Virus record (IMG/VR): IMGVR_UViG_3300035145_003993
Span: 1 to 64,000 of that record
Strand: one strand, 5' to 3'
DNA: 64,000 bases
Positions within the stretch are counted from its first letter, which is position 1; every line of letters begins with the position of its first letter. Positions 1-64,000 of this stretch are shown piece after piece. The notes under the pieces were generated by a model. It had not been told where the DNA came from. It saw only the letters and a program-made list of their open reading frames with translations, and made no database searches. Position numbers and translations under genes: made by a program.

Positions 1-304
1 AGAATCACATGCAGGTCAAGTAGTTGAGTGCATCCCATCAGATGATGTAGTTTGTGAAGAAACCGTCGAAGAAACTGTTGAAGAAACTGTTGAAGAAACT
101 GTTGAAGGAGTAGAAGATGCAGGTCTTCCTGAAGAAGTAGAAGCTGGTGTAGAGGAATCTACTGAAGAACCTATTGAAGAAGTAGAAGCTGGTGTAGAGG
201 AATCTACTGAAGAACCTATTGAAGAAGTAGAAGCTGGTGATAATCAATCAGATTCTGGAGATCCAGAAATTGATCCTGCTCCTCAAGCTGGCGAGCCTGG
301 TTAA
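1..304 (+). CDS. 3' end of an acidic, repeat-rich protein (partial; missing from the ORF track)
   Basis: Frame 2 is open from nt 2 to TAA at 302-304: ESHAGQVVECIPSDDVVCEETVEETVEETVEETVEGVEDAGLPEEVEAGVEESTEEPIEEVEAGVEESTEEPIEEVEAGDNQSDSGDPEIDPAPQAGEPG*. Repeat units are multiples of 3. Confidence 0.85.
   Translation, partial: ESHAGQVVECIPSDDVVCEETVEETVEETVEETVEGVEDAGLPEEVEAGVEESTEEPIEEVEAGVEESTEEPIEEVEAGDNQSDSGDPEIDPAPQAGEPG
56..106 (+). repeat. 12-bp tandem repeat (GAAGAAACTGTT, about 4 copies, encodes EETV)
   Basis: Directly visible; the first copy is degenerate (gaagaaaccgtc). Confidence 0.9.
131..239 (+). repeat. 45-bp perfect tandem repeat, about 2.4 copies (EEVEAGVEESTEEPI)
   Basis: 131-175 is identical to 176-220, with a partial copy at 221-239. 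Confidence 0.95.
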
Positions 305-45100: not shown

Positions 45101-46945
45101 TTAACCACTTACAACTTCTATATCACTTGGATATTTTAATTGAAATATTCCACCTTTAGGAGGAATCATAATACCATTATCATATCTATCAAAAACTGAA
45201 AATGAATTGTCATTATAAAATTTATTAGAATCTAATAAATTAATTCTATCAATAGTATCATTATTAATAGGTCTAATAATAGTTTTAAAATTTGATGAAA
45301 TTGTTAATACTCCAGGGGTGTCCAAAGCTATTTTAACAATTTTATTTACATTAATAGGTTCTCCAATTTGTAGTTTTTCGAATCTCATTAAAGTAAAAAT
45401 TTTACTTTGAACTTCTGTTATTACATCTTGTTGATCGTAATTGTTCGAAACTTTGATTTTTAAATAAATTGCAAAATTATATATTTCTGCATTAATAATA
45501 TTAAATGAATCTCCAATTAATCTATACTCGTTTAAATATTTTGAAATGTTGTATTTTAAAGCATCATTTGCATTTTCATAATGATTTTGGTTATTTTTAC
45601 AAATAATATATAGATCTTTAGCAGCTTTTGAATAAGGGTTGTCTAAAATCGAAGCTTTACTAATTCTACCAAAATCTGAAGGCATGCTATATAATCTTGC
45701 TAATAAATCTTCATGATTAACTATTCTAGATTGCATTTTCATTGAAGGTTTAATTTGATCTTTTAATTCTTCTAAAGACAAAGCGTTAGATCCGCCTACT
45801 GCATTTTCTTCATTTAATACAGATATACTATTTATAACTGTTATAGAATCAGCATCTTCTGAAGCTAGTCTTGGAAATGAATAAATAACGTTATCTATTG
45901 TATTAATACTTCTAGATTGAACATTATGATCATTTCCGCCACCAAATTTATATTTGACATTTAATATTTTACCAGCAGGAGAAACACCTAGACTTTTACT
46001 TCCAATAAGTTTTTTAGGATCTAAAGAAAAATTTGATATATAATCTCTTGATAATAAAGGCATCGATAACTCTTCAGGATTTGTTAGTATTCCATCTTCA
46101 TTAATGCTATTTTTATTATTTCCAAACCTAATCGTAGTTAAACCGTTTTCAAAGTCTCTTTCTAACGCATATCTAAAAGCTGCTGGTGATATTGATATAT
46201 AAGAAGTATTATCTAACATAACTTTTTCATATACAGTATCTTGTGATAAAAATTCAACTTCTTTATATTCATTTAAATCAGATGACCCATCTGATACTTT
46301 TATTATTTTTGTTATATTTTCATTACTAAAAGTATAAGACAAAAAATCTTCAGTTACATTGTCATCAAATGCAAAAGATTCATTTACAATTTCTCCTGAT
46401 GTACAGACTCCAGACTTTTTTATTAAATAAAAACTATCTTCTCCTGAAACGATTTCTCTTATTATTTCGTACTCAAATGAAAAATCAATATTTTCTTCTA
46501 ATATAAAAGTAATACCATCATCTGATTTTAATTGAGTTTCTCTCTTAATAATAGGAAGATAATCTCTGTTAGGTTTTGTATTATCATTTGTATCTTTTAA
46601 AACTAATAAATAAAAATCAACTAAAACGCTTGAAGGTGATGCAAATCCAACATTTACGTTAGCTTTTCTTAAGTGATTAGAAATACTAAATTCTGTAGAA
46701 GCATTTTCATAATCTAATTCATTTATTTGCTGATCTATGTAAAAAGTTAATGATTCTCCTACGATCGCAGCAAAATCTAACAACATTCCACCGAGAGAAG
46801 CTTCAGAAAAATCAGAAATCTTGTCAGGAAAATTACTTCTAGCATAATCCAAGAGTTCACTTTTAAACTCTTCCTTATTTTTATTAATAAGTCTTTTTCT
46901 GTTGAAGTAATTTTTTTCTTTATTTAAAATACTTACGTTTGACAA
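45101..46945 (-). CDS. gp6: baseplate wedge subunit, T4 gp6-like
   Basis: FKSELLDYA..FPD..SDFSEASLGGMLLD..AIVGESLTFYID; IRFG; AVGGS; QSRIVNHED; adjacent to the gp25-like gene. Confidence 0.88.
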   Translation of the reverse strand: MSNVSILNKEKNYFNRKRLINKNKEEFKSELLDYARSNFPDKISDFSEASLGGMLLDFAAIVGESLTFYIDQQINELDYENASTEFSISNHLRKANVNVGFASPSSVLVDFYLLVLKDTNDNTKPNRDYLPIIKRETQLKSDDGITFILEENIDFSFEYEIIREIVSGEDSFYLIKKSGVCTSGEIVNESFAFDDNVTEDFLSYTFSNENITKIIKVSDGSSDLNEYKEVEFLSQDTVYEKVMLDNTSYISISPAAFRYALERDFENGLTTIRFGNNKNSINEDGILTNPEELSMPLLSRDYISNFSLDPKKLIGSKSLGVSPAGKILNVKYKFGGGNDHNVQSRSINTIDNVIYSFPRLASEDADSITVINSISVLNEENAVGGSNALSLEELKDQIKPSMKMQSRIVNHEDLLARLYSMPSDFGRISKASILDNPYSKAAKDLYIICKNNQNHYENANDALKYNISKYLNEYRLIGDSFNIINAEIYNFAIYLKIKVSNNYDQQDVITEVQSKIFTLMRFEKLQIGEPINVNKIVKIALDTPGVLTISSNFKTIIRPINNDTIDRINLLDSNKFYNDNSFSVFDRYDNGIMIPPKGGIFQLKYPSDIEVVSG

Positions 46946-50467: not shown

Positions 50468-50778
50468 TCCTTTAGCGAATTTTCTTCTTCTGAATCAATT
50501 TCTTTTATTTTATCTTTATTGAATGATGTTAAATTTGAAGAAATTTCTAATATAATATTTTTTATATCCTTTATTTCAAGTAAAAGTCTTCTTATTTCTG
50601 GGCTGTCAAAAAAAAGAGGTATTTCTAGTATATCACTTATTCTTTGATATTTGTTGTCTATTTTGTCTAAAGATTCTTCTAAAACTTCCTGCATTTTTAT
50701 TATTATTAAGGCAAACTTAATACAATAATAAATAAAAAATATATTTAAAATTATAGATATTAAAATTATATATAACAT
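50464..50778 (-). CDS. N-terminally membrane-anchored coiled-coil protein
   Basis: Hydrophobic residues 1-28, then heptad helix with PLFFDSPEI; coupled to the sigma gene. Confidence 0.75.
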   Translation of the reverse strand: MLYIILISIILNIFFIYYCIKFALIIIKMQEVLEESLDKIDNKYQRISDILEIPLFFDSPEIRRLLLEIKDIKNIILEISSNLTSFNKDKIKEIDSEEENSLKD

Positions 50779-51974
50779 TATGATAAACTCTCAAAGAAGA
50801 TTTTATAATCATTTATTATAGTCTTAGCGTTATATCTTTGTTTAATTATATTTTTTCTTCTTTTAGATATTTCTAAGTAATAGTCTTCATTCTCAAAAAA
50901 AACTTTTAAATTATTTATCATACTTTCCTTACTAAACTCAGCCCATTTAGAATTAGAATTAAAATCTGTAAAGTTTTTGTCACTATTAAATGTCACTAAT
51001 TCGTAATCAATTTTTAAAAAATCGTTTTCTAAAAATTCTAAATAAGCTGAGTAATTAGTTGCTATAATAGGCAATCCACAAACAGCACTTTCAACTAGCG
51101 GAAGTCCCCATCCTTCTGCTCTTGTTCCAGAAACCATGCATGAAACAAATTCAGATTCATATAGCGATTTTAATTCTTCTATTTTAAAATTTCCAAATAA
51201 TAAAGTAATTTTATCAAAATATTTTTCTTTTAAAGATTCTTTAAGTTTATCTATTATTTTATTTTTATATATAACTGAAGATTTGCCTAGATTAACTTTT
51301 AAAATTATTCCAATTTTTTTATCTTTAATAAATTCAAGACATGTGTTTATTGTTTTAATGATGTTTTTTCTATCACATTCACTACTAACATTAGATATTT
51401 GTCCCATTATTAATATATTTTTTTTATATTTTAAATTTGTTAAAAATTTTTGATTAGTATTCTTTTTGTCGAAATCTTCGTAATACCATTCGTTTATTAC
51501 TTTTATTGGCGTTTGTATATTTTTATTATATTTTTTAATAGTATTTACGAATGATAATTTAGAAAACTCTGAAGGTACGATAACATAGTCCATAACATTA
51601 CAATAATCTATCCAAGATTCTTTGACTAAATCACATTCAAAGCCAGCTGTTACTCCAACATTAACTTTAGCTAATTTTTTCCATTCGCTTGGTATTAAAA
51701 CTTGATATGATTCGTCAAAAACTATGTTGTTTTTATTTTTTTTTGAACATAGAAATATTTCTTTGATTAATCCATTATCAAAATTTTGATTTAAAATCCA
51801 AGACGTTACTCCCCATAAAGTTGGATTAACAAACAAATTTATATTTTTTCTTTTTGAAAGTGCTTTAAAAACTTGTCTTGAATGAACTCCATATCCTGAG
51901 TTTGTAAACAAAGGTCCAGTAATAATAACATTTTTCATTTTAGGTTTACTATTTGAATATTTGTTGTTTGACAT
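50778..51974 (-). CDS. GT-B glycosyltransferase (GT4-like)
   Basis: GP..SGYGVHSR, IVPSEF, RKNI, TRAEGWGLPLVE..GLPIIATNYS. Confidence 0.92.
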   Translation of the reverse strand: MSNNKYSNSKPKMKNVIITGPLFTNSGYGVHSRQVFKALSKRKNINLFVNPTLWGVTSWILNQNFDNGLIKEIFLCSKKNKNNIVFDESYQVLIPSEWKKLAKVNVGVTAGFECDLVKESWIDYCNVMDYVIVPSEFSKLSFVNTIKKYNKNIQTPIKVINEWYYEDFDKKNTNQKFLTNLKYKKNILIMGQISNVSSECDRKNIIKTINTCLEFIKDKKIGIILKVNLGKSSVIYKNKIIDKLKESLKEKYFDKITLLFGNFKIEELKSLYESEFVSCMVSGTRAEGWGLPLVESAVCGLPIIATNYSAYLEFLENDFLKIDYELVTFNSDKNFTDFNSNSKWAEFSKESMINNLKVFFENEDYYLEISKRRKNIIKQRYNAKTIINDYKIFFESLS

Positions 51975-53191
51975 TTAAATTCCTTAATCGAATTTTCTAA
52001 AGACATATCCCACAAATTAATCATTTTTTCATAATTAAATGCTTGATCAGAGTATTCTTTAACTTTTAACTTTAATTTATTTTTTTTATCATTTGAAAAT
52101 TTGTAAAACTTTTGTAAAGCATTTGCAACATTATCGCAACTAACATAATCTTCATATATATAATGTGATTCTTGATTTCCATTTATAGTTTGAAGATCAA
52201 TATCTAATCCTATACCATTTTCAGAATTATCTCTATAATCTATTACTTGTCTATAAAGTCCTCCTGTTTTTGAAGCTATTATTGGAGTTGATGTCATCAT
52301 TGATTGTAAAGTTGAAAGCCCAAACCCTTCATTATAACTTATATTTAAACATACATCTGAAATGTTGTGTAAAATATTAATTAAATCATTTGACAGTTTC
52401 TGTGTTGAAAAAGAAACAGTGTCTAGTATTTCGTAATGTTTAGCTATTTCTATAAGATTTAAGCCAGACTTATCATAAGGATCTGTATGCATTAATAATG
52501 TCACCTTATTTCTATTTTTTTTATCAAGCTTTTCAACAAAAATTTTCCAAGATTTTAATACATCACCAGGTCTTTTTCTTTTACAATTTCTGTTATTCCA
52601 AAAACAAACAAAATTATCTTTTCTATCATTTCCTAGAATATTAATTTTTTCTTTTAAAATATCATTTTTACTCAATGTATAAAATACACTTTTTGGAAAA
52701 GTATGGGGAATAAAATTAGTTTTATTTGGAAAAAGTTTTTTACACATTTTATAAGTCAAATACGAATGACAATTAATTGTATCAACAGACTCATAGATCC
52801 AACGATTATAATCAGGAATAGGCAAATTATCCCAAACATGCCACCATAATATAGGACATACTTGTCTAATTTCATCCTCAATTTCAAATAACCATTTAAA
52901 AAATCTTGCATCTGTAAATATTAATAATGCATCTGGTTTTTCATTTAAAATAATTGATCTTAATAAGTTTGCATCTCCATATCCGTCAATAGGTTTAATA
53001 TAAAAATCTTCGTTAATTTTAATAGTTTTATAATTTTGATGACTAAGAGCAGCTCCTAATTGAATAAAAGAATATTTCCCTGTTTTAGTTAAACCTTCAA
53101 TTAAAAATCTACTTTGGATTCCTACTCCACTTGGTGACATTGCGTGATCTGATATCATTAAAATTTTATTTTTGTTCATTGTTTCCTTCAT
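51935..53191 (-). CDS. GT-B glycosyltransferase (GT4-like)
   Basis: KILMISD..SGVG, FIPH, NNRNCKRKRPG, SYNEGFGLS..TPIIASKTGG. Confidence 0.92.
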   Translation of the reverse strand: MKETMNKNKILMISDHAMSPSGVGIQSRFLIEGLTKTGKYSFIQLGAALSHQNYKTIKINEDFYIKPIDGYGDANLLRSIILNEKPDALLIFTDARFFKWLFEIEDEIRQVCPILWWHVWDNLPIPDYNRWIYESVDTINCHSYLTYKMCKKLFPNKTNFIPHTFPKSVFYTLSKNDILKEKINILGNDRKDNFVCFWNNRNCKRKRPGDVLKSWKIFVEKLDKKNRNKVTLLMHTDPYDKSGLNLIEIAKHYEILDTVSFSTQKLSNDLINILHNISDVCLNISYNEGFGLSTLQSMMTSTPIIASKTGGLYRQVIDYRDNSENGIGLDIDLQTINGNQESHYIYEDYVSCDNVANALQKFYKFSNDKKNKLKLKVKEYSDQAFNYEKMINLWDMSLENSIKEFKCQTTNIQIVNLK

Positions 53192-54024
53192 TATTTACAA
53201 TGATCTGTATTTTTAAATTCACAAAACATACAAGAATTTCTATTTTTTAAGAAAAATTGTTTCTCTACTGTTTTAATCATACTTCTAACTAATTTTTTAG
53301 ATTTTTCTAAATTTTTTGGTCCACTTGAAACTTTAATTAATTGACAAGATTTACCTACTTTTTTAACTTTTTTAAGTAAAATAAAACCACACTGAATATT
53401 TTTCATATCAATATTATTTTTCTTGCCCCAAAAATATTTATATAATATAACTTGAGCTTGAGTATTAAAATCTCTTTGTTTTTCTAAAGACCAACCTCTT
53501 CCATTCGAAGTTTTCCAATCAAGAATCCAATATTTAAATTTATCTTTATTCGGTACTTTAATTATACAATCAACGTAACCTTTAAATTTAGTTGAAATAT
53601 TTTCTATATCTTCGTATAAAGCTTCTTCAGCTGACACTATTTCCCAACCAGGAAAATTTTTATCTAAAAAATTAGGAATTGACATTAAACTAGTCTCTGC
53701 CCACTGTAGCCAGTCATTCAACTTGTTATGTTTATATTTCCAACCTTGTAATTCTGATCTTTGAGTCTGTAACTGAATAAAATCTTCTGAATCGAATCCA
53801 TGTTGTTCCCAAGCAGAAATAATTTTATTTTTTGTTTCTTCTATATTTAATATTCTAGTTTTTAAAAATTGTTCACATGCGTCGTGAATAATAGTTCCAT
53901 AATGTAAATGAGGACTTTCTTCAAAAACAGATAACTTATCAACATAGATAAGCTTATGCCTCCAACTACACTCTTTCCATTGTTTAATTTCTGAAAATGA
54001 AACATGTTCTTTTATGAGATTCAT
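53191..54024 (-). CDS. PD-(D/E)XK RecB/Cas4-like nuclease with a 4-Cys Fe-S signature
   Basis: SFSEIKQWKECSW, YGTIIH, GYVD, ILDWKT, QVILY, C-terminal CMFCEF....C. Confidence 0.88.
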   Translation of the reverse strand: MNLIKEHVSFSEIKQWKECSWRHKLIYVDKLSVFEESPHLHYGTIIHDACEQFLKTRILNIEETKNKIISAWEQHGFDSEDFIQLQTQRSELQGWKYKHNKLNDWLQWAETSLMSIPNFLDKNFPGWEIVSAEEALYEDIENISTKFKGYVDCIIKVPNKDKFKYWILDWKTSNGRGWSLEKQRDFNTQAQVILYKYFWGKKNNIDMKNIQCGFILLKKVKKVGKSCQLIKVSSGPKNLEKSKKLVRSMIKTVEKQFFLKNRNSCMFCEFKNTDHCK

Positions 54025-54152: not shown

Positions 54153-56066
54153 ATGGCTACACATACTGATAATGTGATGTTATTTAACACTTCAAAAGGA
54201 ACGTTAGATAAGATTGGTGATACAGAAACTTTAGAAATTCATGGACTTGAACTAACTAGTTCTCTTTCTGTTCCAGAAAGTGGATTATCAATTGGGTCAA
54301 CAGCAGTTACAGCAACAGCTTCAGAATTAAATAAGTTAGATGGTGTAACAGCATCTACAACACAAATTAACTATGTAAATGTTACAACACTTGGTACAGC
54401 AGAAGCATCAAAAGCAATTACTGTAGATGGTTCTTCTCAGGTTGACGCTTCGTCAATTACATTTACAAACTTAGGAACTGTGACAACTGCAGATATCAAT
54501 GGTGGTACTATTGATGGTGTAGTAATTGGTGGATCTAGTGCTGCTTCTGGTACGTTTACTTCTTTAGATTGTACAGATGGAGCTTTTTCAATAAGTAATC
54601 TCGATATAGATGGTGGAACAGATATCGGTGCTGATCTTGTTGATAGTGACTTAATTATAATTGATGATGGTGCTGCAGGTGTTAATCGAAAATCAGCTTT
54701 ATCTCGACTTAAAACTTACATCCAAACATCATCTCTAAGCTTTACAGGATCAAACACTTTCGAAAATTCTTCTGGTCAAACTATTCAAGGTAGTGAGGCA
54801 GGAGCAGGAACTCTTTACTTGAAAGCTGACCAAGGTGATGATGCAGGTGACTCTTGGGAGATTTCAGTTGCAGACGGCGGTGTTCTTACATTTGGTAATG
54901 ATATCGCTGTTAAGGACACTTTTGTAACTCACGTTACTTTAACACCAAATGCAACAGCTTCGAGCTCAGCAGCTTTATTTGCAGGTAACGTTACAGTAAA
55001 CGGTAATTTAACTGTTAATGGTGACACTACAACGCTTAGTACTTCTACACTTACTGTTGAAGATATTAATATTGTTGTTGCGAATGGTGCTGCTGATAGT
55101 GCTGCTGCCGATGGAGCTGGTATAACAATCGATGGTGCAAATGCTACTTTAACTTGGGTTAATGCTAGCACACATCTTGCTTTCAACAAAGATGTAAACT
55201 TCTTAACTGACGGTATTAAAATTAATGGTACTGCTGTAACAGCAACTGCTGCTGAGTTAAATAAATTAGATGGTGTAACATCATCTACAGCAGAAATAAA
55301 TATACTTACAGGTCTGACAGCATCAACTTCAGAACTTAATTTATTAGATGCAACTGCAGGATCGACTTTAACACTCGCAGGAGGTGATGGTTTAATTATT
55401 AATGATGCTTCTGATGGGAATGCAACGAAAAAGGTTTTAGTCTCTGACCTTACTAGCTTTTTCGCTTCAAGTGGTACAACAACTGCTGATAATATTACAG
55501 CAGGCTCAGGTGCTGTAGAAATTACTACAACTTCAGGTGATATTGTTGTAGACGCACCTACTGGTCAAAGTGTTGATTTACAAGTTAATGGTGGTAATGT
55601 TGTAGAAGTAGCTGCTGATAGAGTGGACGTTTCTCAGCCTTTAATTGTAACAGCTGCAGGTTTGAGTTTAGCTCCTGCTGCTACACACCCGGCATTTGTT
55701 GCAGGTAACATCTTGGCTTTTGAAAGTGGCGCTTCTGGCGGTCTTGAATTAGCAGATTGTGATGATAGTGTTAATACATATCTTAATGCTCCATTTGGAG
55801 TTGCATTAGAAGCTTCTGCGCAAGATGATACAACAGAAATTATGGTTCATACTATTCATGGTGGTTTAGTTAATGTCAAAATTGCATCAAGCACAACTGC
55901 AAAGGGACAATGGATTTATTTAGACGGAACTGCAGGTCAAGCAACAACAACAGTTCCGACTGCAGGTATGGTTTGGAGACTAGGACTTTGTGCAGAACAT
56001 AATGGAACAGCAGTGACTGATGCAGATATTATTTGGATGCCTCAGTTTATTGCAGATTTAGGCTAA
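54153..56066 (+). CDS. fibre-like virion protein (Gly/Ala/Thr/Ser-rich) with a C-terminal DUF2190/cement-like domain
   Basis: Repeated TATxxELNKLDG; GNLTVNGDTTT..LTVED..DGAGI fibre motif; C-terminal PFGVALE..GQWIYL..GQATTTVP..RLG. Confidence 0.7.
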   Translation: MATHTDNVMLFNTSKGTLDKIGDTETLEIHGLELTSSLSVPESGLSIGSTAVTATASELNKLDGVTASTTQINYVNVTTLGTAEASKAITVDGSSQVDASSITFTNLGTVTTADINGGTIDGVVIGGSSAASGTFTSLDCTDGAFSISNLDIDGGTDIGADLVDSDLIIIDDGAAGVNRKSALSRLKTYIQTSSLSFTGSNTFENSSGQTIQGSEAGAGTLYLKADQGDDAGDSWEISVADGGVLTFGNDIAVKDTFVTHVTLTPNATASSSAALFAGNVTVNGNLTVNGDTTTLSTSTLTVEDINIVVANGAADSAAADGAGITIDGANATLTWVNASTHLAFNKDVNFLTDGIKINGTAVTATAAELNKLDGVTSSTAEINILTGLTASTSELNLLDATAGSTLTLAGGDGLIINDASDGNATKKVLVSDLTSFFASSGTTTADNITAGSGAVEITTTSGDIVVDAPTGQSVDLQVNGGNVVEVAADRVDVSQPLIVTAAGLSLAPAATHPAFVAGNILAFESGASGGLELADCDDSVNTYLNAPFGVALEASAQDDTTEIMVHTIHGGLVNVKIASSTTAKGQWIYLDGTAGQATTTVPTAGMVWRLGLCAEHNGTAVTDADIIWMPQFIADLG

Positions 56067-56838: not shown

Positions 56839-56861
56839 TAGCAACATGTTTATGTTTGCTA
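56839..56861. terminator. possible hairpin between convergent genes
   Basis: TAGCAACAT-GTTT-ATGTTTGCTA (1-nt bulge); no clear U tract. Confidence 0.3.
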
Positions 56862-59800
56862 GATCACAAACCAATTCGAACCGTCTGTAACGAGTGTAAC
56901 TGAAGAGTATTGACTTGAAATAACAAATGTTAATGACCCGTCAATAGTTTCAGATCCATTTGCATCAATTGTTACGTTAGCAGTGCCAAGTTGTTTAATA
57001 TTGTATTTGTAACCACTTCCTGCAGTTGCTGCTGCTGGTAATGTTATTGTTACTGCATTAGAACCATTACTAATCAAGTGAATTTCTTCGATACCTGAAG
57101 TTGTGGATATTGTTGTATTTGTTCCAGAAGAATCAGTTATAACAGTTGGAGCAGAAGCACCTCCACCACCAGCAGCTGCAGCCCAGTGTAAACCATTAGC
57201 TGAAGTGTATGTCAAGACATCATTATCAGAAGGGCTTTCTGCAGAAATATCTAAAGCGTTTAGTTCTGTAGCAGTTGAAGTTACTAGTGTTCCACCAAGC
57301 TTAAGACCTGAATCAGTACCATCATGGTCTTCTATATCTACTAGAGTTCCTCCAGCAGAACCTTCTATTGATAATGCAGTTACAGGAGAAGTACTTCCTG
57401 ATCTTACCATTAGCTCTAACGATCCGTAATTATTTGTGTGATTTAAAACTTTACCTGTTTGATGACACCAAAAAGCAGTGCCGCCATTACTTTCTGTTTC
57501 ACGCCATTCAATAGTTCCTAATGTATCTCCATCACCTACTAAATTTGAGTTTGCTTCTTTAACGCTAAAGGAAAGCTTACCCCCTGTTGAAGAAGTTGTG
57601 TCATTCTCGATTAAGAAGATTGGCTCTCCATTACTTGAGTTTTCTGCCATTGTCAATCGTAAGTACTGTGAAGTTAAACTTCCGCTGTAGTTTAGTAACA
57701 TGTCACCAAGCTCAATAGCAGTAGCTTCAAATGTACCTGATCCAATGTAAGTCTTAACATCAGAAAGAGCAACTTGCTTCATTAATCCTGCATCATTAAC
57801 AATAATTCTGTCAGTGTTTTGAAGTGTTGTTGCTTGTGCTACTGTACCACCATCAAGAAGATTAAGCTCTGCAGTTGTTGCAGTTAAACCATCTAGTTTG
57901 TTTATTTCAAGTCCAGAAGCAGTTACAAGAGTATTACCAAGAACTAAGCCTGTTGTAGAACCATTGTGATCAGGAATTCTAACTTTAAGACCATCTGTAT
58001 TATTTTTACCGGTAATTTCTAAACCTGTCGATGGATTCTGTCCAGATGCACTCACTAAAAATGTCATGTCAGAGCCTGTGTCTGTGGCTCCTCCTTTTCC
58101 GCTTGCGGATATAGTGCTTGAATGGTGACCAACTGATATAAATCTTACAGAACCAATAATATCTGACGAAGCGTCTAAAGATGTATTGTGTAACTGAAGT
58201 GATGGGCCCTGAAAATTCGTAGAAGAATTATTATGAACAATTGAAAATGCAGGTTCTTGAGCATTTTCACTAGTCATGTGAAGCTGTATTCCGTCATCTG
58301 GATCATGTTCTAAATAAACGTCTTGATCATTACCTAGGTAAATTCTAGAAGCGTCACCTAGATATAGATCTGACCATTCAAAATCTGCTGAACCTAGAGA
58401 TCTTGTATTTGAACTATCTGGTAAAACATTAGATGCAATACTGGTAAGATCTACACTGCTTCCAGAAGATGCAGCCCAATGTAAGCCATTAGCTGTAGTG
58501 TATGTCAAGACATCATTATCAGAAGGATTTTCAGCAGAAACATCTAACGCATTTAATTCAGTAGCAGTTGAAGTTACTAATGTTCCGCCAAGCTCAAGAC
58601 CTCGAGATGTTCCATTGTGTGTTGCTATATTTACTCTTCCTTCTTTTGAGCTATCTGAGTAAATCTTCATTACATTAAGCATAGACTCATTAGTTGCTAC
58701 ATCAAAAATAATGCTGCCATCTGATCCTACACTTCCATTTCGACTAGTCACTTCTGCCTTAAACGCAATCCGAGAATATAAAAAGTCATCAATATAACCA
58801 CTCATTTCTCCAAGCTCAGTTGCGCTGTTATTTGCATGAGTAAATCTGAGTCTAGAATTTCTTCCTGCAGAAGCTGCATTTGAATATAGTTCTAAAGTAG
58901 GAGAATTATCATCAGTAGATTCAAATGCATTAACTATTTTTAAAGTATTTGGATCGACGATAGAATCTCTTTGCAATCTTATCCCTTCAGCATTACCGTA
59001 GTCTCCAAAAGAAATCATTGTCAAAGTAGAATTGCTTGGGTTTAAAATTAAATTTGACATGTCTGTAGCTGTTAAAGAACCTCCAGAAAAAGAAACATCA
59101 GAAAGTTCATTAAGAGAAGAAGCACCCCCAGAAGATGCAGCCCAATGTAAGCCATTAGCTGCCGTGTAAGTTAATACATCACTATCTGAAGGATTTTCAG
59201 CTGAAACATCGAGTACGTTTAATTCAGTTGCCAAAGAAGTTAACAATGTTGAACCTAGAACAAGACCTTGACCTGATCCATCATGTGTAGGAATTTCTAC
59301 ATTTACGCCACCACTTGAACTACCTTCTACGATGAGTCCAATGCTCGACGTGTTATCAAATGATATTCCTGCTTGCGTAACACCAAATGTTAAGCGACCA
59401 GCTTCTGAACCATTGACAGGAGAAACAATTTCAGAACCAATTCTAGCATAATTATGACCTAAGCCCGCGTTATCTCTACCTACAGCAATTATAGATAGTA
59501 TTTTGTCGTTCACTGCAGGCGTTGTGCTAAAGTTGTCAAATCTTAAAGTCCCTGTTGAATTAGAATCTGAATTGCTGCTTCTTAGCGTCAAATGAGGTCT
59601 AGTACTTCCTCCAGCTGAATCCTGTAAAATGAGTCCGTCTAAAAGATCATGTCTTAATATAACATCTTGGTTATTACCAAAGTATATGTAAGCACTGTCG
59701 CCTAGATATAGATCTGACCATTCTGCTGCAGATGATCCTAGTGAATAAGTATTCGCAGAATCTGGGACTAAGTTGCTTGAAAAAGATGAAGCTGCTAAAC

Positions 59801-61841
59801 CACTGACAAAGTTTGCTCTTGTCATTTTCTTAAGATTACTAGAATCTTCAGAATCAGCAATTAATATAATATCGTTATCATTAATTGCTGTTTTTGCAGT
59901 TTGCCCTGTAATTGCCGTGCTTGTTAAGCTTAAAGATCCTGCACTTGAAATAGAAGCATCACCCGAGACTTTACCAAAAGTATATTCTGGAATTCTGCTC
60001 GCCAATAAACTGCTATTAACTCCAGTACCGCCATTATCAACAATAAGAAGATCACTGTCAGTAATTGCCTGGCTAAGCTCAGATGCACCGTCAATATCCA
60101 TTGAGCTAAGAGCAACCTTGTTTGCTGTTGTTAATTGATTTAGTTTAGAGTTTGCAATTGATCCAGCAAGCATTGCGCTAGTAACACCTGCTGCTTTAAT
60201 CTTAAGATTGTCATTTACATCAATCTCAATTGAAGAATTGTCAACATTTACATCAAGAACGTTACCATTTTGAGTTAAACCAGCACCTGCACCAGCTGAA
60301 CCAGTACTAGAGAATTGATAAACTGAAATTGCGTCAGTGCCTACAACAAAAGTTGAAGGATCTGCTACGACTTGAACCCATCCTGTTCCTTCATTTACAG
60401 TACCACTTGCGACAAAGATATAAGCGCCAGGAATTTCATCTGCTTCGTCACAGTATCCACATCTTGTAAGAATCCAATCGGTTGAAGCGTCACCAACTTG
60501 TGATACGTAATATCTACCATTTTCTTCAGCATTAGTTTGATCTTTTACAAGAATACCATCATATTGTGACCATGTAGTTACACCATCAATATCCAGCGTA
60601 GCACTTGCGCCTAGATTTAATGTGCCTCCAACGCCTAAAGTACCATTGTCATATGTTCCTGCTAGGTTTTGTGTTGTTGCTGCTAAAACTGAAGGTTTTG
60701 AAATGATGCCTTGTGCAACTTCATCAACATAAGCTTTGTTAGCTGCATCTGTTCCTGATGTTGGGTTTGCAAGATTTGTAATCTTATTAGAATTAAGATT
60801 TAAATCAACACTTTGTCCAGTTAAATCAACAGATGCAATTTCTGTATTGGAAGAGATCACCAGATTTCCTGCGTTAACACTTATTTCAACATCCGATGTA
60901 TTGTTTGCATCTAAGGTATTCTTATCAACGCGATCAATCAGAAGTCTTTTCGGTGCAGTCACTGCGTATGGATTAACCCTTGTATTAATTGTCAATCCAT
61001 TTTTGCTTGCCATCAAGATTTCACCATCAGTTTGTGTACCATCACCAGCTACTAAGTGCAAACCATGTGCTGATTGTGTTACAACATCCATTCCAAGATT
61101 ACCACCAGTTATAAAACGAGTATTCTTTGTTCCTGCATGCGATGCTTGATTGTATACGTCGTTTGTAAATATACCTGCATAACTTTGAATATCACCATTA
61201 GGGTCAGCATTGCCTGCATCATTAGCATGCGCAGCACCTTTAACTCTTAACGCTGTTGCATTATCTTTGTGTCCTATTATTACACCACTTGCAGTCAAAT
61301 CTTGACCTACCAAAACAGTTGATGAAGCATTACCAATCAATATCTCAGCACTACTTGCAACTTCTGCAGCAATTCTTAATTGTCCTGTTTGATTGTCAAT
61401 TAGTGAATTTGTTCCGTCATGATGAATTTGCAAATCTTCGCTAGAACCAACACTTAACTTAAAAGTATCAGGCAAAATAGTCAAACCATTCTCATCTGAT
61501 GTTAAAACTTTGCTCGCCTCAGCTGTTCCTAATAAAGTCAAATCATTATAATTTAACTCGCTTGCAAGAGCTGTTACGCCAAGAGACAATATTGTGTCTT
61601 CTGGCGTTTTATTAATCCAAGCGGAAGAAGTATTGTCATATACTAAGAAATTATTGTTACTGATATTGTTTATTGTGACATCAGAAATGTACTTTAATTG
61701 CCCTAAATTAAAAATTCTGTCTATATTGAATTCATTACCATAAATGTTCCCACCTATTCTAGTAAGATCAGGCAAGTCACCGTTACTATAATCAAAATTT
61801 TCTGGATATTCATCTAAAGCGTAAATATTTATATTACTCAT
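56859..61841 (-). CDS. long modular tail/head fibre protein
   Basis: KITNLANPTSGTDAANKAYVD neck motif; ILVKDQTNAEENGRY..WILTR domain; ELNxLD shaft repeats; C-terminal VTITLPAA..VTID..ETIDG..SVTLVTDGSNW domain. Confidence 0.85.
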   Translation of the reverse strand: MSNINIYALDEYPENFDYSNGDLPDLTRIGGNIYGNEFNIDRIFNLGQLKYISDVTINNISNNNFLVYDNTSSAWINKTPEDTILSLGVTALASELNYNDLTLLGTAEASKVLTSDENGLTILPDTFKLSVGSSEDLQIHHDGTNSLIDNQTGQLRIAAEVASSAEILIGNASSTVLVGQDLTASGVIIGHKDNATALRVKGAAHANDAGNADPNGDIQSYAGIFTNDVYNQASHAGTKNTRFITGGNLGMDVVTQSAHGLHLVAGDGTQTDGEILMASKNGLTINTRVNPYAVTAPKRLLIDRVDKNTLDANNTSDVEISVNAGNLVISSNTEIASVDLTGQSVDLNLNSNKITNLANPTSGTDAANKAYVDEVAQGIISKPSVLAATTQNLAGTYDNGTLGVGGTLNLGASATLDIDGVTTWSQYDGILVKDQTNAEENGRYYVSQVGDASTDWILTRCGYCDEADEIPGAYIFVASGTVNEGTGWVQVVADPSTFVVGTDAISVYQFSSTGSAGAGAGLTQNGNVLDVNVDNSSIEIDVNDNLKIKAAGVTSAMLAGSIANSKLNQLTTANKVALSSMDIDGASELSQAITDSDLLIVDNGGTGVNSSLLASRIPEYTFGKVSGDASISSAGSLSLTSTAITGQTAKTAINDNDIILIADSEDSSNLKKMTRANFVSGLAASSFSSNLVPDSANTYSLGSSAAEWSDLYLGDSAYIYFGNNQDVILRHDLLDGLILQDSAGGSTRPHLTLRSSNSDSNSTGTLRFDNFSTTPAVNDKILSIIAVGRDNAGLGHNYARIGSEIVSPVNGSEAGRLTFGVTQAGISFDNTSSIGLIVEGSSSGGVNVEIPTHDGSGQGLVLGSTLLTSLATELNVLDVSAENPSDSDVLTYTAANGLHWAASSGGASSLNELSDVSFSGGSLTATDMSNLILNPSNSTLTMISFGDYGNAEGIRLQRDSIVDPNTLKIVNAFESTDDNSPTLELYSNAASAGRNSRLRFTHANNSATELGEMSGYIDDFLYSRIAFKAEVTSRNGSVGSDGSIIFDVATNESMLNVMKIYSDSSKEGRVNIATHNGTSRGLELGGTLVTSTATELNALDVSAENPSDNDVLTYTTANGLHWAASSGSSVDLTSIASNVLPDSSNTRSLGSADFEWSDLYLGDASRIYLGNDQDVYLEHDPDDGIQLHMTSENAQEPAFSIVHNNSSTNFQGPSLQLHNTSLDASSDIIGSVRFISVGHHSSTISASGKGGATDTGSDMTFLVSASGQNPSTGLEITGKNNTDGLKVRIPDHNGSTTGLVLGNTLVTASGLEINKLDGLTATTAELNLLDGGTVAQATTLQNTDRIIVNDAGLMKQVALSDVKTYIGSGTFEATAIELGDMLLNYSGSLTSQYLRLTMAENSSNGEPIFLIENDTTSSTGGKLSFSVKEANSNLVGDGDTLGTIEWRETESNGGTAFWCHQTGKVLNHTNNYGSLELMVRSGSTSPVTALSIEGSAGGTLVDIEDHDGTDSGLKLGGTLVTSTATELNALDISAESPSDNDVLTYTSANGLHWAAAAGGGGASAPTVITDSSGTNTTISTTSGIEEIHLISNGSNAVTITLPAAATAGSGYKYNIKQLGTANVTIDANGSETIDGSLTFVISSQYSSVTLVTDGSNWFVI
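57175..59777 (-). repeat. dispersed in-frame direct repeats within the fibre gene
   Basis: Exact matches: 34 nt at 58462-58495 and 59128-59161; 30 nt at 57204-57233 and 58497-58526; 23 nt at 58357-58379 and 59701-59723. Confidence 0.9.
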
Positions 61842-61889: not shown

Positions 61890-64000
61890 TTATAGCGCAA
61901 CCCAAACATAAGCCTCTGGAACAGGTATTGTGTGGTCATAAAAAAACGCATGATTATAAAGTTTATGCAAAGACGATGATGAGCCGCTGTAAGGTACTTT
62001 AAAGAATTGCCTAATGTTGTATACTTTCTTAAGATAAAATTTCAGTGTAATGCTACTTGGGGGATTATTTATGTTCGAACTGACTTCATCGTTATAAAAA
62101 TAAGCGTTTAAATCTTGCGCGTTATATATACCACCATCACCACTCGTATTATTGTTATAATAGATACCAGTTGAAGAAGAATACAAAATTCCACCTTCAT
62201 TGAATGGTAAAAGACCATAATCTCGGCCATCAACGTGTCTCTCTGAATTTAAAGAATGAGGATTTACGTATGTAGGTATTCTTCCTGCTGGAAGTGTATT
62301 TAATTGAACACTATTTTGAGTAGCTGTATACGGGTTAAGTCTACACATACTATTAATATCATTAGGATTAGGCTTAAAAGAAACAGTAAACACTTTATAG
62401 TTGGTCCTGAAAACTCCTTGTGCATCTAAAGTATTAAAATTAACTTTTAATGTTAACGGTGTATTTGGACCGTATAAGCTATACCATAATTCTGATTCAG
62501 GCAAACAAACATGAGAATTTCCATATCTATTAGGAAGAAAACCAGATAAATTATTTCCTGTTAAAGGGTCCCGGTCTCTGCCTATTTTGTTTGGATCATC
62601 CCAATGATCATTTATTTTTTTTCCATTTCTCCACTCTATTTCTCCAAGATAATTTTCATCTCGGATTAAGTCTATTCCTCCATCATATTTTAATCCATAC
62701 AACATTGTGTTTTGATCATAATTTGATTTTGAATAATTCTTTGCATAACCAGAGTAGTTGCACTGCAGGGTAACAAAATTTACATTAACGACATTATTTA
62801 TATTACTCGGGAATATAGAAACTGATTGTGGCTTATTACCATTATCAAATGTATCGTCAACATTATTCATATAAACATCGTAACTTGTAGGCTCGCTACT
62901 TAAAGTCTGTGAAGAATTTTCTAAAACAAATGCTCTAACAGCTTGCGCTGTAACTAGATTATTATGTTTGTTGTCAGCAGCAATTTCTTCATCTAAACTT
63001 TGCAACACGTTAACTTCTGTTACAGAATTATTCGGGTCGTCATTATCAGCATTTGCATCGTTTGTAACACTACCTAAGACTTTGTAGTTATTCATTGTCT
63101 TAAGTTTGTCATTTGTAATTGTATCATTGGCGATATTACCGCCAACAATTGATGTTGCTGCGATTGAACCGGTTGCTGTGCCTTGAGCATCAACACCACC
63201 AGTAACTGCTCCATTTTCTATGTTTAAAGTCTGTACTTTACCAGCTTCAGCTGTGTTTGCTTCTGTATATCTTAAAACATCACCTGTTGCTCCAGTCGGA
63301 AGAGAAAATGCTGCTTCTTGCCCTTCAACATTGTAAGGTGAAGAAATAATCCAACCAGAGAATTCTGATCCTCGGCCGCTTACAGGATTACTCCAGATCT
63401 TTTTCCAAGTAATATCAATGTAAGGAATATCAGAAGTATTAAATTGAATGACTTTTTGATTAACTAGGAATTCTGATGTATTTGAACTGTTTGTGGTGCC
63501 AATTAATTTTTTGTAGATACTACCTTGTGAATTAATTGTTACTTTTTTAATTGTGCCACTAGCTAGAAAATAAATTCTAGTAGAATCGTTGTGTGACAAG
63601 TTATCCCAAGCATTAATTTGATTATTTATCGGCAAATTCAGAGTAACTTGTTGTTCTGAATTTGTAAATACGTAATAATCTTTGAATTTGAAAAATCTTT
63701 CCTCTAATGCAATTACTTGGCCCCAATTATAAGTATTATTTGTATTAACTGGTCTAACAAGTTGAGTGTAGCTATGAAGTCTTTTTTTCTTTTCGTCTTT
63801 TGCTCTCCACGAGCCATTATGGTAAACAAATATTAACTTACTAGTTTCTTGCAAGTCAGTCCAAGAATATGTGCATGTTTTAGAGGTAGAAAGTACTATA
63901 TTAACTTTTGCAGAACCTAAATTACTATCATTAACATTATTAACATGTGTAACTGGAATAATTTCTATTGTTTTAAGTTCATCAGCCGTATTTGGTAGAG
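61890..64000 (-). CDS. fibre-like structural protein (5'-partial)
   Basis: The frame stays open upstream of the track's TTG at 63854 to the window edge (LPNTADELKTIEIIPV...). Fibre motifs: GATGDVL, IANDTITNDKL, LVTAQAVRAFV. Confidence 0.75.
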   Translation of the reverse strand, partial: LPNTADELKTIEIIPVTHVNNVNDSNLGSAKVNIVLSTSKTCTYSWTDLQETSKLIFVYHNGSWRAKDEKKKRLHSYTQLVRPVNTNNTYNWGQVIALEERFFKFKDYYVFTNSEQQVTLNLPINNQINAWDNLSHNDSTRIYFLASGTIKKVTINSQGSIYKKLIGTTNSSNTSEFLVNQKVIQFNTSDIPYIDITWKKIWSNPVSGRGSEFSGWIISSPYNVEGQEAAFSLPTGATGDVLRYTEANTAEAGKVQTLNIENGAVTGGVDAQGTATGSIAATSIVGGNIANDTITNDKLKTMNNYKVLGSVTNDANADNDDPNNSVTEVNVLQSLDEEIAADNKHNNLVTAQAVRAFVLENSSQTLSSEPTSYDVYMNNVDDTFDNGNKPQSVSIFPSNINNVVNVNFVTLQCNYSGYAKNYSKSNYDQNTMLYGLKYDGGIDLIRDENYLGEIEWRNGKKINDHWDDPNKIGRDRDPLTGNNLSGFLPNRYGNSHVCLPESELWYSLYGPNTPLTLKVNFNTLDAQGVFRTNYKVFTVSFKPNPNDINSMCRLNPYTATQNSVQLNTLPAGRIPTYVNPHSLNSERHVDGRDYGLLPFNEGGILYSSSTGIYYNNNTSGDGGIYNAQDLNAYFYNDEVSSNINNPPSSITLKFYLKKVYNIRQFFKVPYSGSSSSLHKLYNHAFFYDHTIPVPEAYVWVAL

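What the first reader, a model, noticed from the sequence alone, without database searches (positions are those of the whole stretch)
57175..59777. Fibre gene built as a cassette array: four variable modules between conserved linkers
Seen: the linker H[DN]G..GL.LG.TL[VL]T..ELN.LD.SAE.PSD.DVLTYT.ANGLHWAA occurs three times in full and once partially (~57890-57975), and PDS.NT.SLGS..EWSDLYLGD..GN.QDV occurs twice. Together they form two ~440-aa super-repeats, each with two strongly diverged beta modules. Linkers retain perfect 23-34 nt DNA identity at spacings of 666, 1293 and 1344 nt, all multiples of 3. Inference: recombination or gene conversion at the linkers adds, deletes or swaps binding modules in frame, tuning host range without an invertase or DGR.
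Basis: partly seen in the sequence, partly recalled or inferred. Interest (0 to 1): 0.6.

Follow-up and report, generated by a model that had tools for sequence, protein, structure and literature searches.

The report
Modular phage tail fibre, recombining linkers
The distal half of a 1660-residue tail-fibre gene of an uncultivated aquatic phage is a chain of four trimer-forming modules joined by a repeated connector, and a close relative lacks exactly one module plus connector, which fits the long-known way phage fibres evolve by recombination at conserved motifs.

Summary
Window 56859-61841 (- strand) is one 1660-aa tail-fibre gene. Residues 689-1557 hold four modules (M1-M4). Each ends in the same connector: three full copies and one half copy. 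M1 and M3 also open with a shared "P" motif. Exact DNA runs of 34, 30 and 23 nt lie at spacings of 666, 1293 and 1344 nt.

The recombination reading is supported by natural variants:
- The closest relative, 88-92% identical in protein, lacks exactly M2 plus one connector (224 codons, in frame). Its junction lies in the connector's last bases, where the 34-nt repeat sits.
- Other relatives lose similarity at the P motif, at the end of connector A, or at the last connector.
- M4 is about 88-90% identical to that of fibres that are otherwise only 40-60% identical.
- Connector synonymous sites are unsaturated (dS 0.4-0.6), while module synonymous sites are at chance.
- No reverse transcriptase, invertase or integrase was found.

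The M1/M3-type module is predicted to trimerise and has a fibre-like fold. The C-terminal knob has a fold seen in T4 gp10 and the CBA120 TSP4 N-terminal part.

That the modules bind receptors, and that exchange tunes host range, is untested. Conceptually this is the mosaicism described for T-even fibres, here in a module family that Pfam and NCBIfam did not match.

The parts
56859..61841 (-). Whole tail-fibre gene, 1660 aa (P0001).
   Evidence: ORF list and translation. PHROG tail-fibre family phrog_8745 matches aa 359-558. tblastn hits to annotated tail fibres of Methylophilales, Pelagibacter and Synechococcus phages cover aa 254-623. A baseplate wedge gene lies at 45101-46945.
59772..61841 (-). 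Proximal part, aa 1-690. It is kept in all orthologues. It contains the widespread tail-fibre domain at about aa 340-620.
   Evidence: Identity to relatives: 92% to L026, 75% to L010, 57-62% to P0122-P0125, 67% to L009. Similarity to L010 and to P0122/P0123/P0125 stops at aa 690-697.
59286..59771 (-). Module M1, aa 691-852. It is P-type and opens with the P motif at aa 693-733 (window 59643-59765).
   Evidence: HMM hits. Member of the ~190-aa P-to-connector unit family, alignment A1. Monomer model pLDDT 85. Trimer model ipSAE 0.94 against a best control of 0.04.
59130..59285 (-). Connector A, aa 853-904. Its last bases (59128-59161) are the 34-nt exact repeat shared with connector B.
   Evidence: The L026 junction and the end of the 94% match to the X6 contig both fall here.
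58620..59129 (-). Module M2, aa 905-1074. Together with one connector it is absent from relative L026.
   Evidence: In the source run it has the same contig depth as its neighbours, 25.1 against 25.9-26.6. Only weak relatives exist elsewhere: 36% in L009 and 34% in P0008.
58464..58619 (-). Connector B, aa 1075-1126. It is D-type over most of its length and identical to A at its 3' end.
   Evidence: Nucleotide identity is 0.85 to D and 0.79 to A. It shares a 30-nt exact run with D and a 34-nt run with A.
57969..58463 (-). Module M3, aa 1127-1291. It is P-type, with the P motif at aa 1141-1182 (window 58296-58421).
   Evidence: It is 39-43% identical to M1. A 23-nt exact run with M1 lies at 58357/59701, and a 25-nt run with the paralogous fibre gene at 58295/68276.
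57891..57968 (-). Half connector C, aa 1292-1317. It has the first half only and is followed by a second ELN.LDG copy.
   Evidence: The half form is the commoner one in the family, 32 of 45 units.
57327..57890 (-). Module M4, aa 1318-1505. It is a cassette shared at about 88-90% identity with otherwise divergent fibres.
   Evidence: In P0002-P0004, M4 is 79-90% identical, while the M3 core is about 40% and CT is 48-62%.
57171..57326 (-). Connector D, aa 1506-1557.
   Evidence: In L009 identity rises to 94% just after it.
56862..57170 (-). C-terminal knob CT, aa 1558-1660. It consists of a glycine stretch followed by a beta-sandwich.
   Evidence: Model pLDDT 93. VIA Z 12.1, rmsd 1.9 A over 90 residues, to CBA120 TSP4 residues 79-175; Z 11.7 to the C-terminal domain of Acinetobacter phage Solidus gp83; Z 11.2 to 6o38. 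Foldseek also lists T4 gp10 and gp9. It is always C-terminal in 32 homologues.
61890..64000 (-). 3' part of the next fibre-like gene. The whole gene is genome 61890-66911, 1673 aa, and runs out of the window. It carries the aa 340-540 domain twice.
   Evidence: A third fibre gene lies outside the window at genome 67002-70265 (1087 aa, P0015). It has two P motifs and one full connector.

Best explanation
This is the distal half of a homotrimeric tail fibre of a large uncultivated aquatic myovirus. The virus has a T4-type capsid, more than 211 kb of genome and 27% G+C.

The fibre is a string of four related beta-rich modules of about 170-215 aa. Each module ends in the same connector, which has two parts:
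- a strand-turn-helix element, H.G..GL.LG.TL.T..A.ELN.LD;
- in the full form, a beta-hairpin element, PSD.DVLTYT..NGLHW.

The string ends in a conserved beta-sandwich knob.

The connectors and the P motif are structurally constrained, so they stay alike in protein and in part in DNA. They therefore give ordinary homologous recombination short stretches of identity that are always in the same reading frame. This recombination could be carried out by phage or host enzymes, between copies in one gene, between the paralogous fibre genes of the genome, or between co-infecting relatives. Crossovers there delete, insert or replace whole modules without breaking the fibre. Short conversion tracts also keep the copies partly homogenised.

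What is shown:
- the architecture;
- the excess DNA identity in the connectors;
- natural variants whose breakpoints lie at these motifs;
- the absence of a dedicated diversifying enzyme.

What is inferred:
- that crossovers occur in the motifs themselves;
- that the L026 lineage lost M2 by an A x B crossover;
- that changes in module content alter fibre length or receptor use, and thereby host range.
For: (1) Architecture and repeats.

(2) Relative L026 (ENA contig, 9.6 kb) is 92% identical over aa 1-904 and about 88% over aa 1128-1660.
- It lacks 224 codons (672 nt), which is M2 plus one connector, in frame.
- The sequence switches from A-type to the sequence downstream of B in the connector's last bases. 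There the window's A and B share 34 identical bases.

(3) Further breakpoints lie at the motifs.
- The X6 marine contig is 94% identical from 61673 down to 59128, the end of connector A, and unlike afterwards.
- P0124 is similar up to aa 912. P0122, P0123, P0125 and L010 are similar up to aa 690-697, with the P motif at 693.
- L009 is 67% identical up to aa 906, differs in the middle, and is 94% identical in CT.
- In P0002-P0004, M4 is about 88-90% identical between an M3 core at about 40% and a CT at about 50-62%.
- The paralogous fibre gene is 95% identical to its L010 orthologue up to about aa 600 and at most 50% from about aa 601. Its P motif is at aa 622.

(4) Synonymous sites.
- At conserved residues, 70% (B-D connectors) and 72% (P motifs) use the same codon. 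Codon usage predicts 48% and 53% (z 2.9 and 2.2).
- The rest of the super-repeat alignment sits at expectation, 45% against 46%, which serves as an internal control.
- dS is 0.57 for A-B and 0.42 for B-D. This is no larger than the orthologous dS between the window and L026, which is 0.69 for A and 1.01 for D.
- B resembles D over most of its length but is identical to A at its 3' end. Such a mosaic is expected from short conversion tracts.

(5) The P-to-connector unit occurs 1, 2 or 3 times in 24, 9 and 1 homologous metagenomic proteins. L010 has a 740-aa fibre with a single unit, a full connector and CT.

(6) Trimer model of the unit.
- ipSAE is 0.94 against a best control of 0.04.
- In the tool's calibration this mark was reached by 20 of 30 proteins solved as pairs of one chain and 1 of 23 solved as single chains.
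- The runs agree in at least 97% of contacts and the partner's pLDDT is at least 90.
- The job used my own alignment and three copies, unlike the calibration.

(7) Fold hits are all phage or predator fibres and tailspikes.

(8) No RVT_1, Resolvase or Phage_integrase match in the genome. No strong inverted repeats around the gene.
Against: - The L026 variant rests on a single metagenomic contig. That contig also carries an in-frame TAA 20 codons after the junction, so an assembly collapse or a defective genome cannot be excluded.
- Breakpoints seen in distant relatives are biased towards conserved motifs, because detectable similarity naturally ends at the last conserved stretch.
- The synonymous-site tests rest on only about 40 codons per pair. 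The A-D pair and the pairs with the paralogue's connector show no excess.
- Within the source sample no contig shows a module-number variant. The joints reported at 85% likeness are ambiguous.
- Neither binding by any module nor any effect on host range was tested. The host is unknown.
Confidence: 0.78

Rival explanations
1. This is purely structural repetition. The four modules are old tandem domain duplications of a fibre shaft, and the connectors are conserved only because the trimer needs them. The DNA identity is a by-product of protein constraint and AT-rich codon bias. Differences among relatives reflect wholesale replacement of distal fibre parts, not crossovers at the connectors.
For: - The connector residues are invariant or nearly so across 43 units from many phages.
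- The whole unit is interface in the trimer model.
- Codon bias alone predicts about 48% identical codons.
- The A-D pair and the connector pairs with the paralogue show no excess.
Against: - The excess of identical codons and the exact runs of 30 and 34 nt in the A-B and B-D pairs exceed codon-randomised expectation, p 0.0005 and 0.0035.
- The modules sit exactly at expectation.
- Paralogous connector dS is no larger than orthologous dS.
- The one high-identity variant, L026, has an exact one-unit, in-frame difference whose junction lies in the repeat.
Confidence: 0.15
2. This is an assembly artefact. The window's four-module gene, or the three-module L026 gene, is a chimera made by an assembler jumping between repeated connectors of different genes or strains.
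For: - Logan unitigs of the source run break at the repeats, and adjacent pieces overlap only inside them, for example at 59132-59157.
- An independent assembly of the same phage from another sample ends inside M3.
- A second, 85%-similar variant co-occurs at lower depth, 8.3 against 26.
Against: - All pieces of the gene, M2 included, have the same depth in the source run, 25.1-26.6, with no differing bases.
- The exact repeats are only 23-34 nt, far shorter than reads.
- The adjacencies M1-connector A and M3-to-CT are confirmed by L026.
- The last 402 aa are confirmed at 100% identity by another sample.
- The L026 differences from the window are spread evenly on both sides of the junction.
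Confidence: 0.04
3. This is a programmed diversification system, such as a diversity-generating retroelement, an invertase or shufflon switch, or another dedicated enzyme that uses the connectors as sites.
For: The in-frame spacing of the repeats is regular. The genome record is only 84% complete, so an enzyme could be missing.
Against: - No reverse transcriptase, serine recombinase or tyrosine recombinase was found in 211 kb.
- The repeats are direct, not inverted.
- Copies differ at all base types and at synonymous sites, not in the adenine-specific pattern of a retroelement.
Confidence: 0.03

Closest known systems
Distal tail-fibre locus of T-even phages, gp37/gp38. Sources: Tetart et al. 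1996 and 1998, as cited in Trojet et al. 2011, PMC3157838.
   Same: Conserved short motifs alternate with variable segments. [quoted passage not shown] Duplication of a small fibre domain changes host range. No dedicated enzyme is needed.
   Different: - There is no sequence relationship. Pfam, NCBIfam and PHROGs give no gp37 or gp38 match.
- The units here are whole trimeric domains of about 170-215 aa along the shaft. In gp38 they are 10-30-aa loops in a monomeric adhesin.
- The exchange is documented here only by comparison of metagenomic genomes, not by crosses.
Chimeric fibre proteins of Bdellovibrio bacteriovorus: Bd2439, Bd1334 and Bd3182, PDB entries 8ol4, 8oml and 8ojn.
   Same: These are the best structural matches of the P-to-connector module: Z 8.4 (rmsd 3.9 A over 101 residues) and Z 8.2 (rmsd 4.5 A over 133 residues). 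From my own knowledge, they too are trimeric fibres assembled from interchangeable domains.
   Different: The Z scores are at the level that the tool calls common for models without a clear match. Sequence identity is 10-15%. They belong to a bacterial predator, not a phage.
T4 gp10-like domains: CBA120 TSP4 N-terminal part (7rej, 7rfv; PMC8825819), T4 gp10 and gp9, Mu fibre in 6o38.
   Same: The C-terminal knob (aa about 1564-1660) has this beta-sandwich fold: Z 12.1, rmsd 1.9 A over 90 residues.
   Different: In CBA120 and T4 these domains sit near the N-terminus or in the baseplate, where they dock other proteins. Here the domain is the very C-terminus of a fibre, as in Solidus gp83, the Pa223 capsid spike and the Mu fibre. 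Sequence identity is only 19-22%.
Cyanophage and pelagiphage tail fibres, for example P-SCSP1u fibre gp28 (8i4m) and the fibres of Synechococcus phages S-H34 and S-CBP2.
   Same: They share the P motif, L.P....NTY.LGS....W..LY; the profile hit to 8i4m residues 1005-1032 has E 0.04. They also share the module fold; BFVD hits reach E down to 3e-8 overall, and the two named cyanophage fibres S-H34 and S-CBP2 match at E about 2e-5 and 7e-4. The aa 340-620 domain is shared as well.
   Different: Cultured phages in the 50,697-record collection have no sequence-level counterpart of M1-M4 at E up to 1e-3. Only the last ~70 residues of CT and one 50-aa motif match.
Invertible tail-fibre segments (Mu G, P1 C, p15B Min) and diversity-generating retroelements (BPP-1 Mtd).
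   Same: All have the same end: alternative fibre distal parts.
   Different: Those systems need an invertase with inverted sites, or a reverse transcriptase with a template repeat. Neither is present here.

Membership tests
Phage tail fibre (trimeric host-recognition fibre) | Sequence similarity to proteins annotated as tail fibres. | tested here: met
   phrog_8745 'tail fiber protein', E 4.6e-24, matches aa 359-558. tblastn to annotated tail fibres of Melnitz, Mosig and Synechococcus phages gives E down to 6e-34. This applies only to aa about 254-623.
Phage tail fibre (trimeric host-recognition fibre) | Location among tail and baseplate genes of a tailed phage. | tested here: met
   On the same strand lie the major head protein, portal, large terminase and a baseplate wedge subunit (45101-46945). 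Two more giant fibre-like genes are adjacent.
Phage tail fibre (trimeric host-recognition fibre) | Homotrimeric, intertwined beta-rich structure. | tested here: met
   This is a prediction only. The trimer of the P-to-connector unit scores ipSAE 0.94 against a best control of 0.04. The tool's calibration counts are 20 of 30 solved pairs and 1 of 23 single chains. The runs agree in at least 97% of contacts and the pLDDT is at least 90. Fold hits are to fibres and tailspikes.
Phage tail fibre (trimeric host-recognition fibre) | Presence in the virion and binding to a host receptor. | not testable with these tools
   The phage is uncultivated and its host is unknown.
Mosaic fibre or adhesin evolving by recombination at conserved motifs (T-even gp37/gp38 type) | Conserved motifs flanking variable segments. 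| tested here: met
Mosaic fibre or adhesin evolving by recombination at conserved motifs (T-even gp37/gp38 type) | Exchange breakpoints in natural relatives lie in or next to the motifs. | tested here: met
   L026, the X6 contig, P0124, L009, L010, P0122-P0125, P0002-P0004 and the paralogous gene. One caveat: detection bias affects the distant pairs.
Mosaic fibre or adhesin evolving by recombination at conserved motifs (T-even gp37/gp38 type) | Homology to gp37 or gp38. | tested here: not met
   No Pfam or NCBIfam family matches, and none of the six PHROG hits is a gp37 or gp38 family. The likeness is of mechanism, not of descent.
Mosaic fibre or adhesin evolving by recombination at conserved motifs (T-even gp37/gp38 type) | Recombinants have altered host range. 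| not testable with these tools
   This needs a cultured phage-host pair.
Diversity-generating retroelement | Reverse transcriptase, plus a template and variable repeat pair with adenine-specific differences. | tested here: not met
   No RVT_1 match in the 211-kb record, which is 84% complete. Differences among the repeats involve all bases.
Invertase or shufflon fibre switch | Site-specific recombinase, plus inverted crossover sites flanking alternative 3' ends. | tested here: not met
   No Resolvase or Phage_integrase match. The repeats are direct, and the inverted pairs are weak, at most 30 nt and at most 87% complementary.

The most novel reading that the evidence does not exclude
The connectors may be more than passively conserved. 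They would be kept alike in DNA by frequent gene conversion among the 5-6 copies in the three neighbouring fibre genes. They would then serve as standard in-frame 'sockets', so that within a single phage population modules are swapped, lost and gained often enough to act as a host-range diversification system without any dedicated enzyme. The un-named P-to-connector module family would be a shared parts library of aquatic phages.
Probability: 0.15. Interest if true: 0.6.

Novelty: new member of a known kind. Interest (0 to 1): 0.36.

Why it matters
- It gives a clean, base-level natural example of how a fibre gains or loses a whole trimeric domain in frame. The example comes from an uncultivated lineage of large aquatic phages.
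- It defines a recurrent module of about 190 aa, from P motif to connector, with a confident predicted trimer. Pfam and NCBIfam scans matched nothing in it, and the PHROG hits cover only aa about 300-560 and the C-terminal knob.
- Such defined junctions are useful for annotating metagenomic fibres and for understanding why assemblies break in these genes.
- They are also natural splice points for studying fibre modularity.
- It does not change the accepted picture of fibre evolution.

Tried and rejected
- Pfam (E up to 1) and NCBIfam (E up to 0.1) gave no family for any part.
- Megablast of the gene against 50,697 phage records gave no match.
- A plain self-BLASTP returned only the identity hit, so I used overlapping 120-aa windows instead.
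- A profile of the module against PDB sequences matched only the 28-residue P motif in 6eu4 and 8i4m.
- Foldseek of the module against PDB gave nothing at E up to 0.001. The VIA Z scores of about 8 are at the tool's background level and are used only as a thematic hint.
- All four runs are contigs, so no read-level variant frequencies were available. Several joints are in frame, for example 57176 to 57748 (net -564 nt) and 58379 to 60108 (-1728 nt) in the source run. They were obtained at 85% likeness with sides of 62-68 nt. They may come from other fibre genes or phages, so I do not count them as variants.
- The DNA of the 115-kb contig that carries P0134 could not be fetched because the file is too large.
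- A regular-expression search for connectors in L009 and L010 failed and was replaced by HMM coordinates.
- I did not run the large representative protein search, because the word search already gave 298 relatives.
No alternative genetic code was used. The in-frame stop in L026 and the frameshift in L009 were left as they are.
Full report
**Context**

The window is the first 64 kb of a 211,364-bp IMG/VR virus record, estimated 84% complete, with 27% G+C. It encodes a gp23-like major head protein, a portal, a large terminase, a primase and a baseplate wedge subunit. The head protein is closest to those of uncultured giant phages, Flavobacterium phages and Rhodothermus phage RM378, at 33-44% identity. 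This is therefore a distant T4-like myovirus.

Its DNA is found almost completely in one wetland metagenome, which is probably the source. Parts of it occur in estuary and marine metagenomes.

The finding lies inside one ORF, 56859-61841 on the - strand, 1660 aa, here P0001. It is the last of three consecutive giant fibre-like genes. The other two are genome 67002-70265 (1087 aa) and genome 61890-66911 (1673 aa).

**The observation**

- Full connectors lie at aa 853-904 (A), 1075-1126 (B) and 1506-1557 (D).
- A half connector (C) lies at aa 1292-1317.
- The P motif lies at aa 693-733 and 1141-1182.
- Windowed self-comparison shows two super-repeats of about 440 aa. It also shows that all four modules share their C-terminal ~80 residues.
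- Maximal exact DNA runs are 34 nt (spacing 666), 30 nt (1293) and 23 nt (1344), exactly as reported.
- Two further runs, of 25 and 20 nt, link this gene to the paralogous fibre gene about 10 kb away.

**Is the DNA identity more than protein constraint plus codon bias?**

I used the genome's own codon usage as the null model. Results at conserved, degenerate residues:

| Comparison | Same codon, observed | Same codon, expected | z |
|---|---|---|---|
| Connectors B and D | 70% | 48% | 2.9 |
| The two P motifs | 72% | 53% | 2.2 |
| Remaining 303 aligned positions of the super-repeats | 45% | 46% | -0.2 |

The third row is an internal control and shows that module synonymous sites are saturated.

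With amino acids fixed and codons redrawn, runs as long as the observed ones have p 0.0005 for A-B and p 0.0035 for B-D. The A-D pair and the pairs with the paralogue's connector show no excess.

Nei-Gojobori dS between connectors is 0.57 (A-B), 0.42 (B-D) and 0.97 (A-D). The orthologous dS between the window and its closest relative L026 is 0.69 for connector A and 1.01 for connector D, and 0.27-1.40 over the other segments.

Connector B is D-like over most of its length: 0.85 identity to the window's D and 0.83 to L026's D. Its last 34 nt are identical to A.

This within-connector mosaic, together with paralogous dS no larger than orthologous dS, is what short gene-conversion tracts or recent crossovers would leave. 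The samples are small, about 40 codons per pair, so the evidence is suggestive rather than conclusive.

**Related genomes**

This is the strongest evidence.

- **L026.** This is an ENA contig of 9,563 nt with the same neighbouring genes.
  - Its fibre is 92% identical to P0001 over aa 1-904 and about 88% over aa 1128-1660. It is 224 codons (672 nt) shorter.
  - M2 and one connector are missing, and the frame is preserved.
  - The sequence is A-type up to the last bases of the connector and then continues with what follows B in the window.
  - This is the product expected of an unequal crossover in the 34-nt stretch that A and B share, or of the reciprocal insertion.
  - The more distant L009 has an M2-like module (36% identity) after its connector A. 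This favours loss in the L026 lineage.
  - L026 also has an in-frame TAA at codon 925, where the window has a leucine codon. Gene callers therefore split it into products of 924 and 472 aa.
- **X6 marine contig.** This 17-kb contig is 94% identical from 61673 down to 59128, the last base of connector A, and unlike afterwards.
- **P0124.** It is similar up to aa 912 and then carries different modules.
- **L009.** This is a syntenic contig at about 74% nucleotide identity. It is 67% identical in protein up to aa 906, has a shorter and different middle, and is 94% identical in CT from aa 1565.
- **L010, P0122, P0123 and P0125.** L010 comes from a 239-kb relative. All four share only aa about 16-697 and then differ. 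The P motif starts at aa 693.
  - L010 also has a separate 740-aa fibre consisting of the common fibre domain, one P module, one full connector and CT.
- **P0002-P0004.** These have M4 at about 88-90% identity. It lies between an M3 core at about 40% and a CT at 48-62%, with steps at connectors C and D.
- **The paralogous fibre gene.** It is 95% identical to its L010 orthologue for aa 41-600 and at most 50% from aa 601, just before its first P motif at aa 622.

Across 34 metagenomic homologues the P-to-connector unit, which is 151-162 aa from motif to motif, occurs once in 24, twice in 9 and three times in 1.

Neither is met.

One caveat applies. For distant pairs, similarity must end at a conserved motif whatever the true crossover point. 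Only L026 and the X6 contig are close enough to be free of that bias.

**What the parts are**

- **P-to-connector unit.** An alignment of 43 units (A1) gives a monomer model with pLDDT 85.
  - A trimer model scores ipSAE 0.94 against a best control of 0.04. In the tool's calibration this mark was reached by 20 of 30 proteins solved as pairs of one chain and by 1 of 23 solved as single chains.
  - The three runs agree in at least 97% of contacts, and the partner's pLDDT is at least 90. My own alignment and three copies differ from the calibration set-up.
  - Nearly the whole chain is interface, as in intertwined fibre domains.
  - The best structural neighbours are the Bdellovibrio fibres Bd2439 and Bd1334 (Z 8.4 and 8.2), the phage T5 L-shaped fibre (Z 7.8), tailspikes and T4 gp34. 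The theme is consistent, but the Z values are at background level.
  - Predicted-structure libraries hold the same fold in uncultured marine virus proteins, in Synechococcus phage tail fibres, and in fibres that end in Peptidase_S74 or Peptidase_G2 domains.
- **P motif.** It matches by sequence the fibre gp28 of cyanophage P-SCSP1u (8i4m) and a tail spike protein (6eu4).
- **Second half of the connector.** The sequence ...DVLTYT..NGLHW is a variant of a ...GQVL.T.G.G...W motif. That motif recurs in the paralogous fibre, in L009 and in P0124. It models as a beta-hairpin.
- **C-terminal knob.** The model has pLDDT 93 and a clear fold match: Z 12.1, rmsd 1.9 A over 90 residues, to CBA120 TSP4 residues 79-175. 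It also matches the C-terminal domains of Solidus gp83 and the Pa223 capsid spike, entry 6o38, and, by Foldseek, T4 gp10 and gp9.
  - CT is the best conserved segment between the window and L026: 98% identity, dN/dS 0.02.
  - CT is C-terminal in all 32 homologues aligned.

**Mechanism**

No reverse transcriptase, serine recombinase or tyrosine recombinase is encoded in the record. The repeats are direct.

The simplest explanation is general homologous recombination at short conserved stretches that are always in phase. It could act within the gene, between the three neighbouring fibre genes, or between co-infecting relatives.

This is the principle established for the T-even distal fibre locus. 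[quoted passage not shown] 1996 and 1998, as summarised in PMC3157838).

The present case differs in three ways:
- The units exchanged are whole trimeric shaft domains.
- The module family is one that Pfam and NCBIfam do not match and that has no sequence match in 50,697 phage records.
- The lineage is an uncultivated aquatic one.

Whether the internal modules bind anything, or mainly set fibre length and flexibility, is unknown. The conserved tip argues against a simple row of variable binders.

**Assembly quality**

- In the source run, exact contigs tile the gene at equal depth, 25.1-26.6, M2 included. They overlap only inside the repeats.
- A second sample gives a 100% identical C-terminal 402 aa, on a contig that ends inside M3.
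- The exact repeats are far shorter than reads, so a chimera is unlikely. Only reads can prove this.

**Verdict**

It is a new member of a known kind of system and of moderate interest.

Noticed in passing
L026:5851-5853 (ENA contig ERZ24794580 k141_6657): The closest relative's fibre gene has an in-frame TAA 20 codons after the module-deletion junction, where the window has a leucine codon. It was therefore called as two genes, of 924 and 472 aa. It could be a sequencing error, a defective genome or a real split.
   Followed up: partly
L009:2805-2824 (IMGVR_UViG_3300028388_006029): The orthologous fibre gene of this relative changes reading frame within a 20-nt overlap of two long ORFs of 941 and 431 aa. 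This is a frameshift of unknown reality. The contig also ends inside the gene's 5' part.
   Followed up: no
window 61542-61841 (aa 1-100 of the fibre): Between the window and L026 the first 100 codons are much more diverged than the next 240: dS 1.40 and 75% aa identity against dS 0.35 and 97%. This is a further recombination boundary near aa 100, and it is not at any of the repeated motifs.
   Followed up: partly
window 61890-64000, and genome 64001-70265 outside the window: There are three consecutive giant fibre-like genes of 1660, 1673 and 1087 aa. The middle one carries the common tail-fibre domain twice. The 1087-aa one has two P motifs and a full connector, and shares exact 20-25-nt runs with the studied gene.
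   Followed up: partly
window 54153-56066 (+): This is a 637-aa ORF on the opposite strand, conserved in size in relatives (637-660 aa) and without any PHROG family. It has internal short repeats, weak matches to fibre segments, and a 30-nt, 87% complementary match to the fibre gene (55560-55589 against 60792-60821). It may be a fourth fibre-like protein.
   Followed up: no
window 50778-54024 (-): Two paralogous glycosyltransferases (398 and 418 aa) and a PD-(D/E)XK-type exonuclease lie directly beside the fibre locus and are syntenic in relatives.
   Followed up: no
window 68-239: A cluster of exact direct repeats of at least 23 nt lies at the very start of the record. It was not examined.
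   Followed up: no
window 57249-57773: The source run holds a second contig, 85% identical to module M4 and connector D, at a depth of 8.3 against about 26. A related fibre variant, or a second phage, therefore co-occurs in the same sample.
   Followed up: no
window 2434-4242 (-): The major head protein is gp23-like. Its best matches are an uncultured 484-kb phage (41% identity), Flavobacterium phages (44%) and Rhodothermus phage RM378 (33%). The host of this 27% G+C phage remains unknown.
   Followed up: partly
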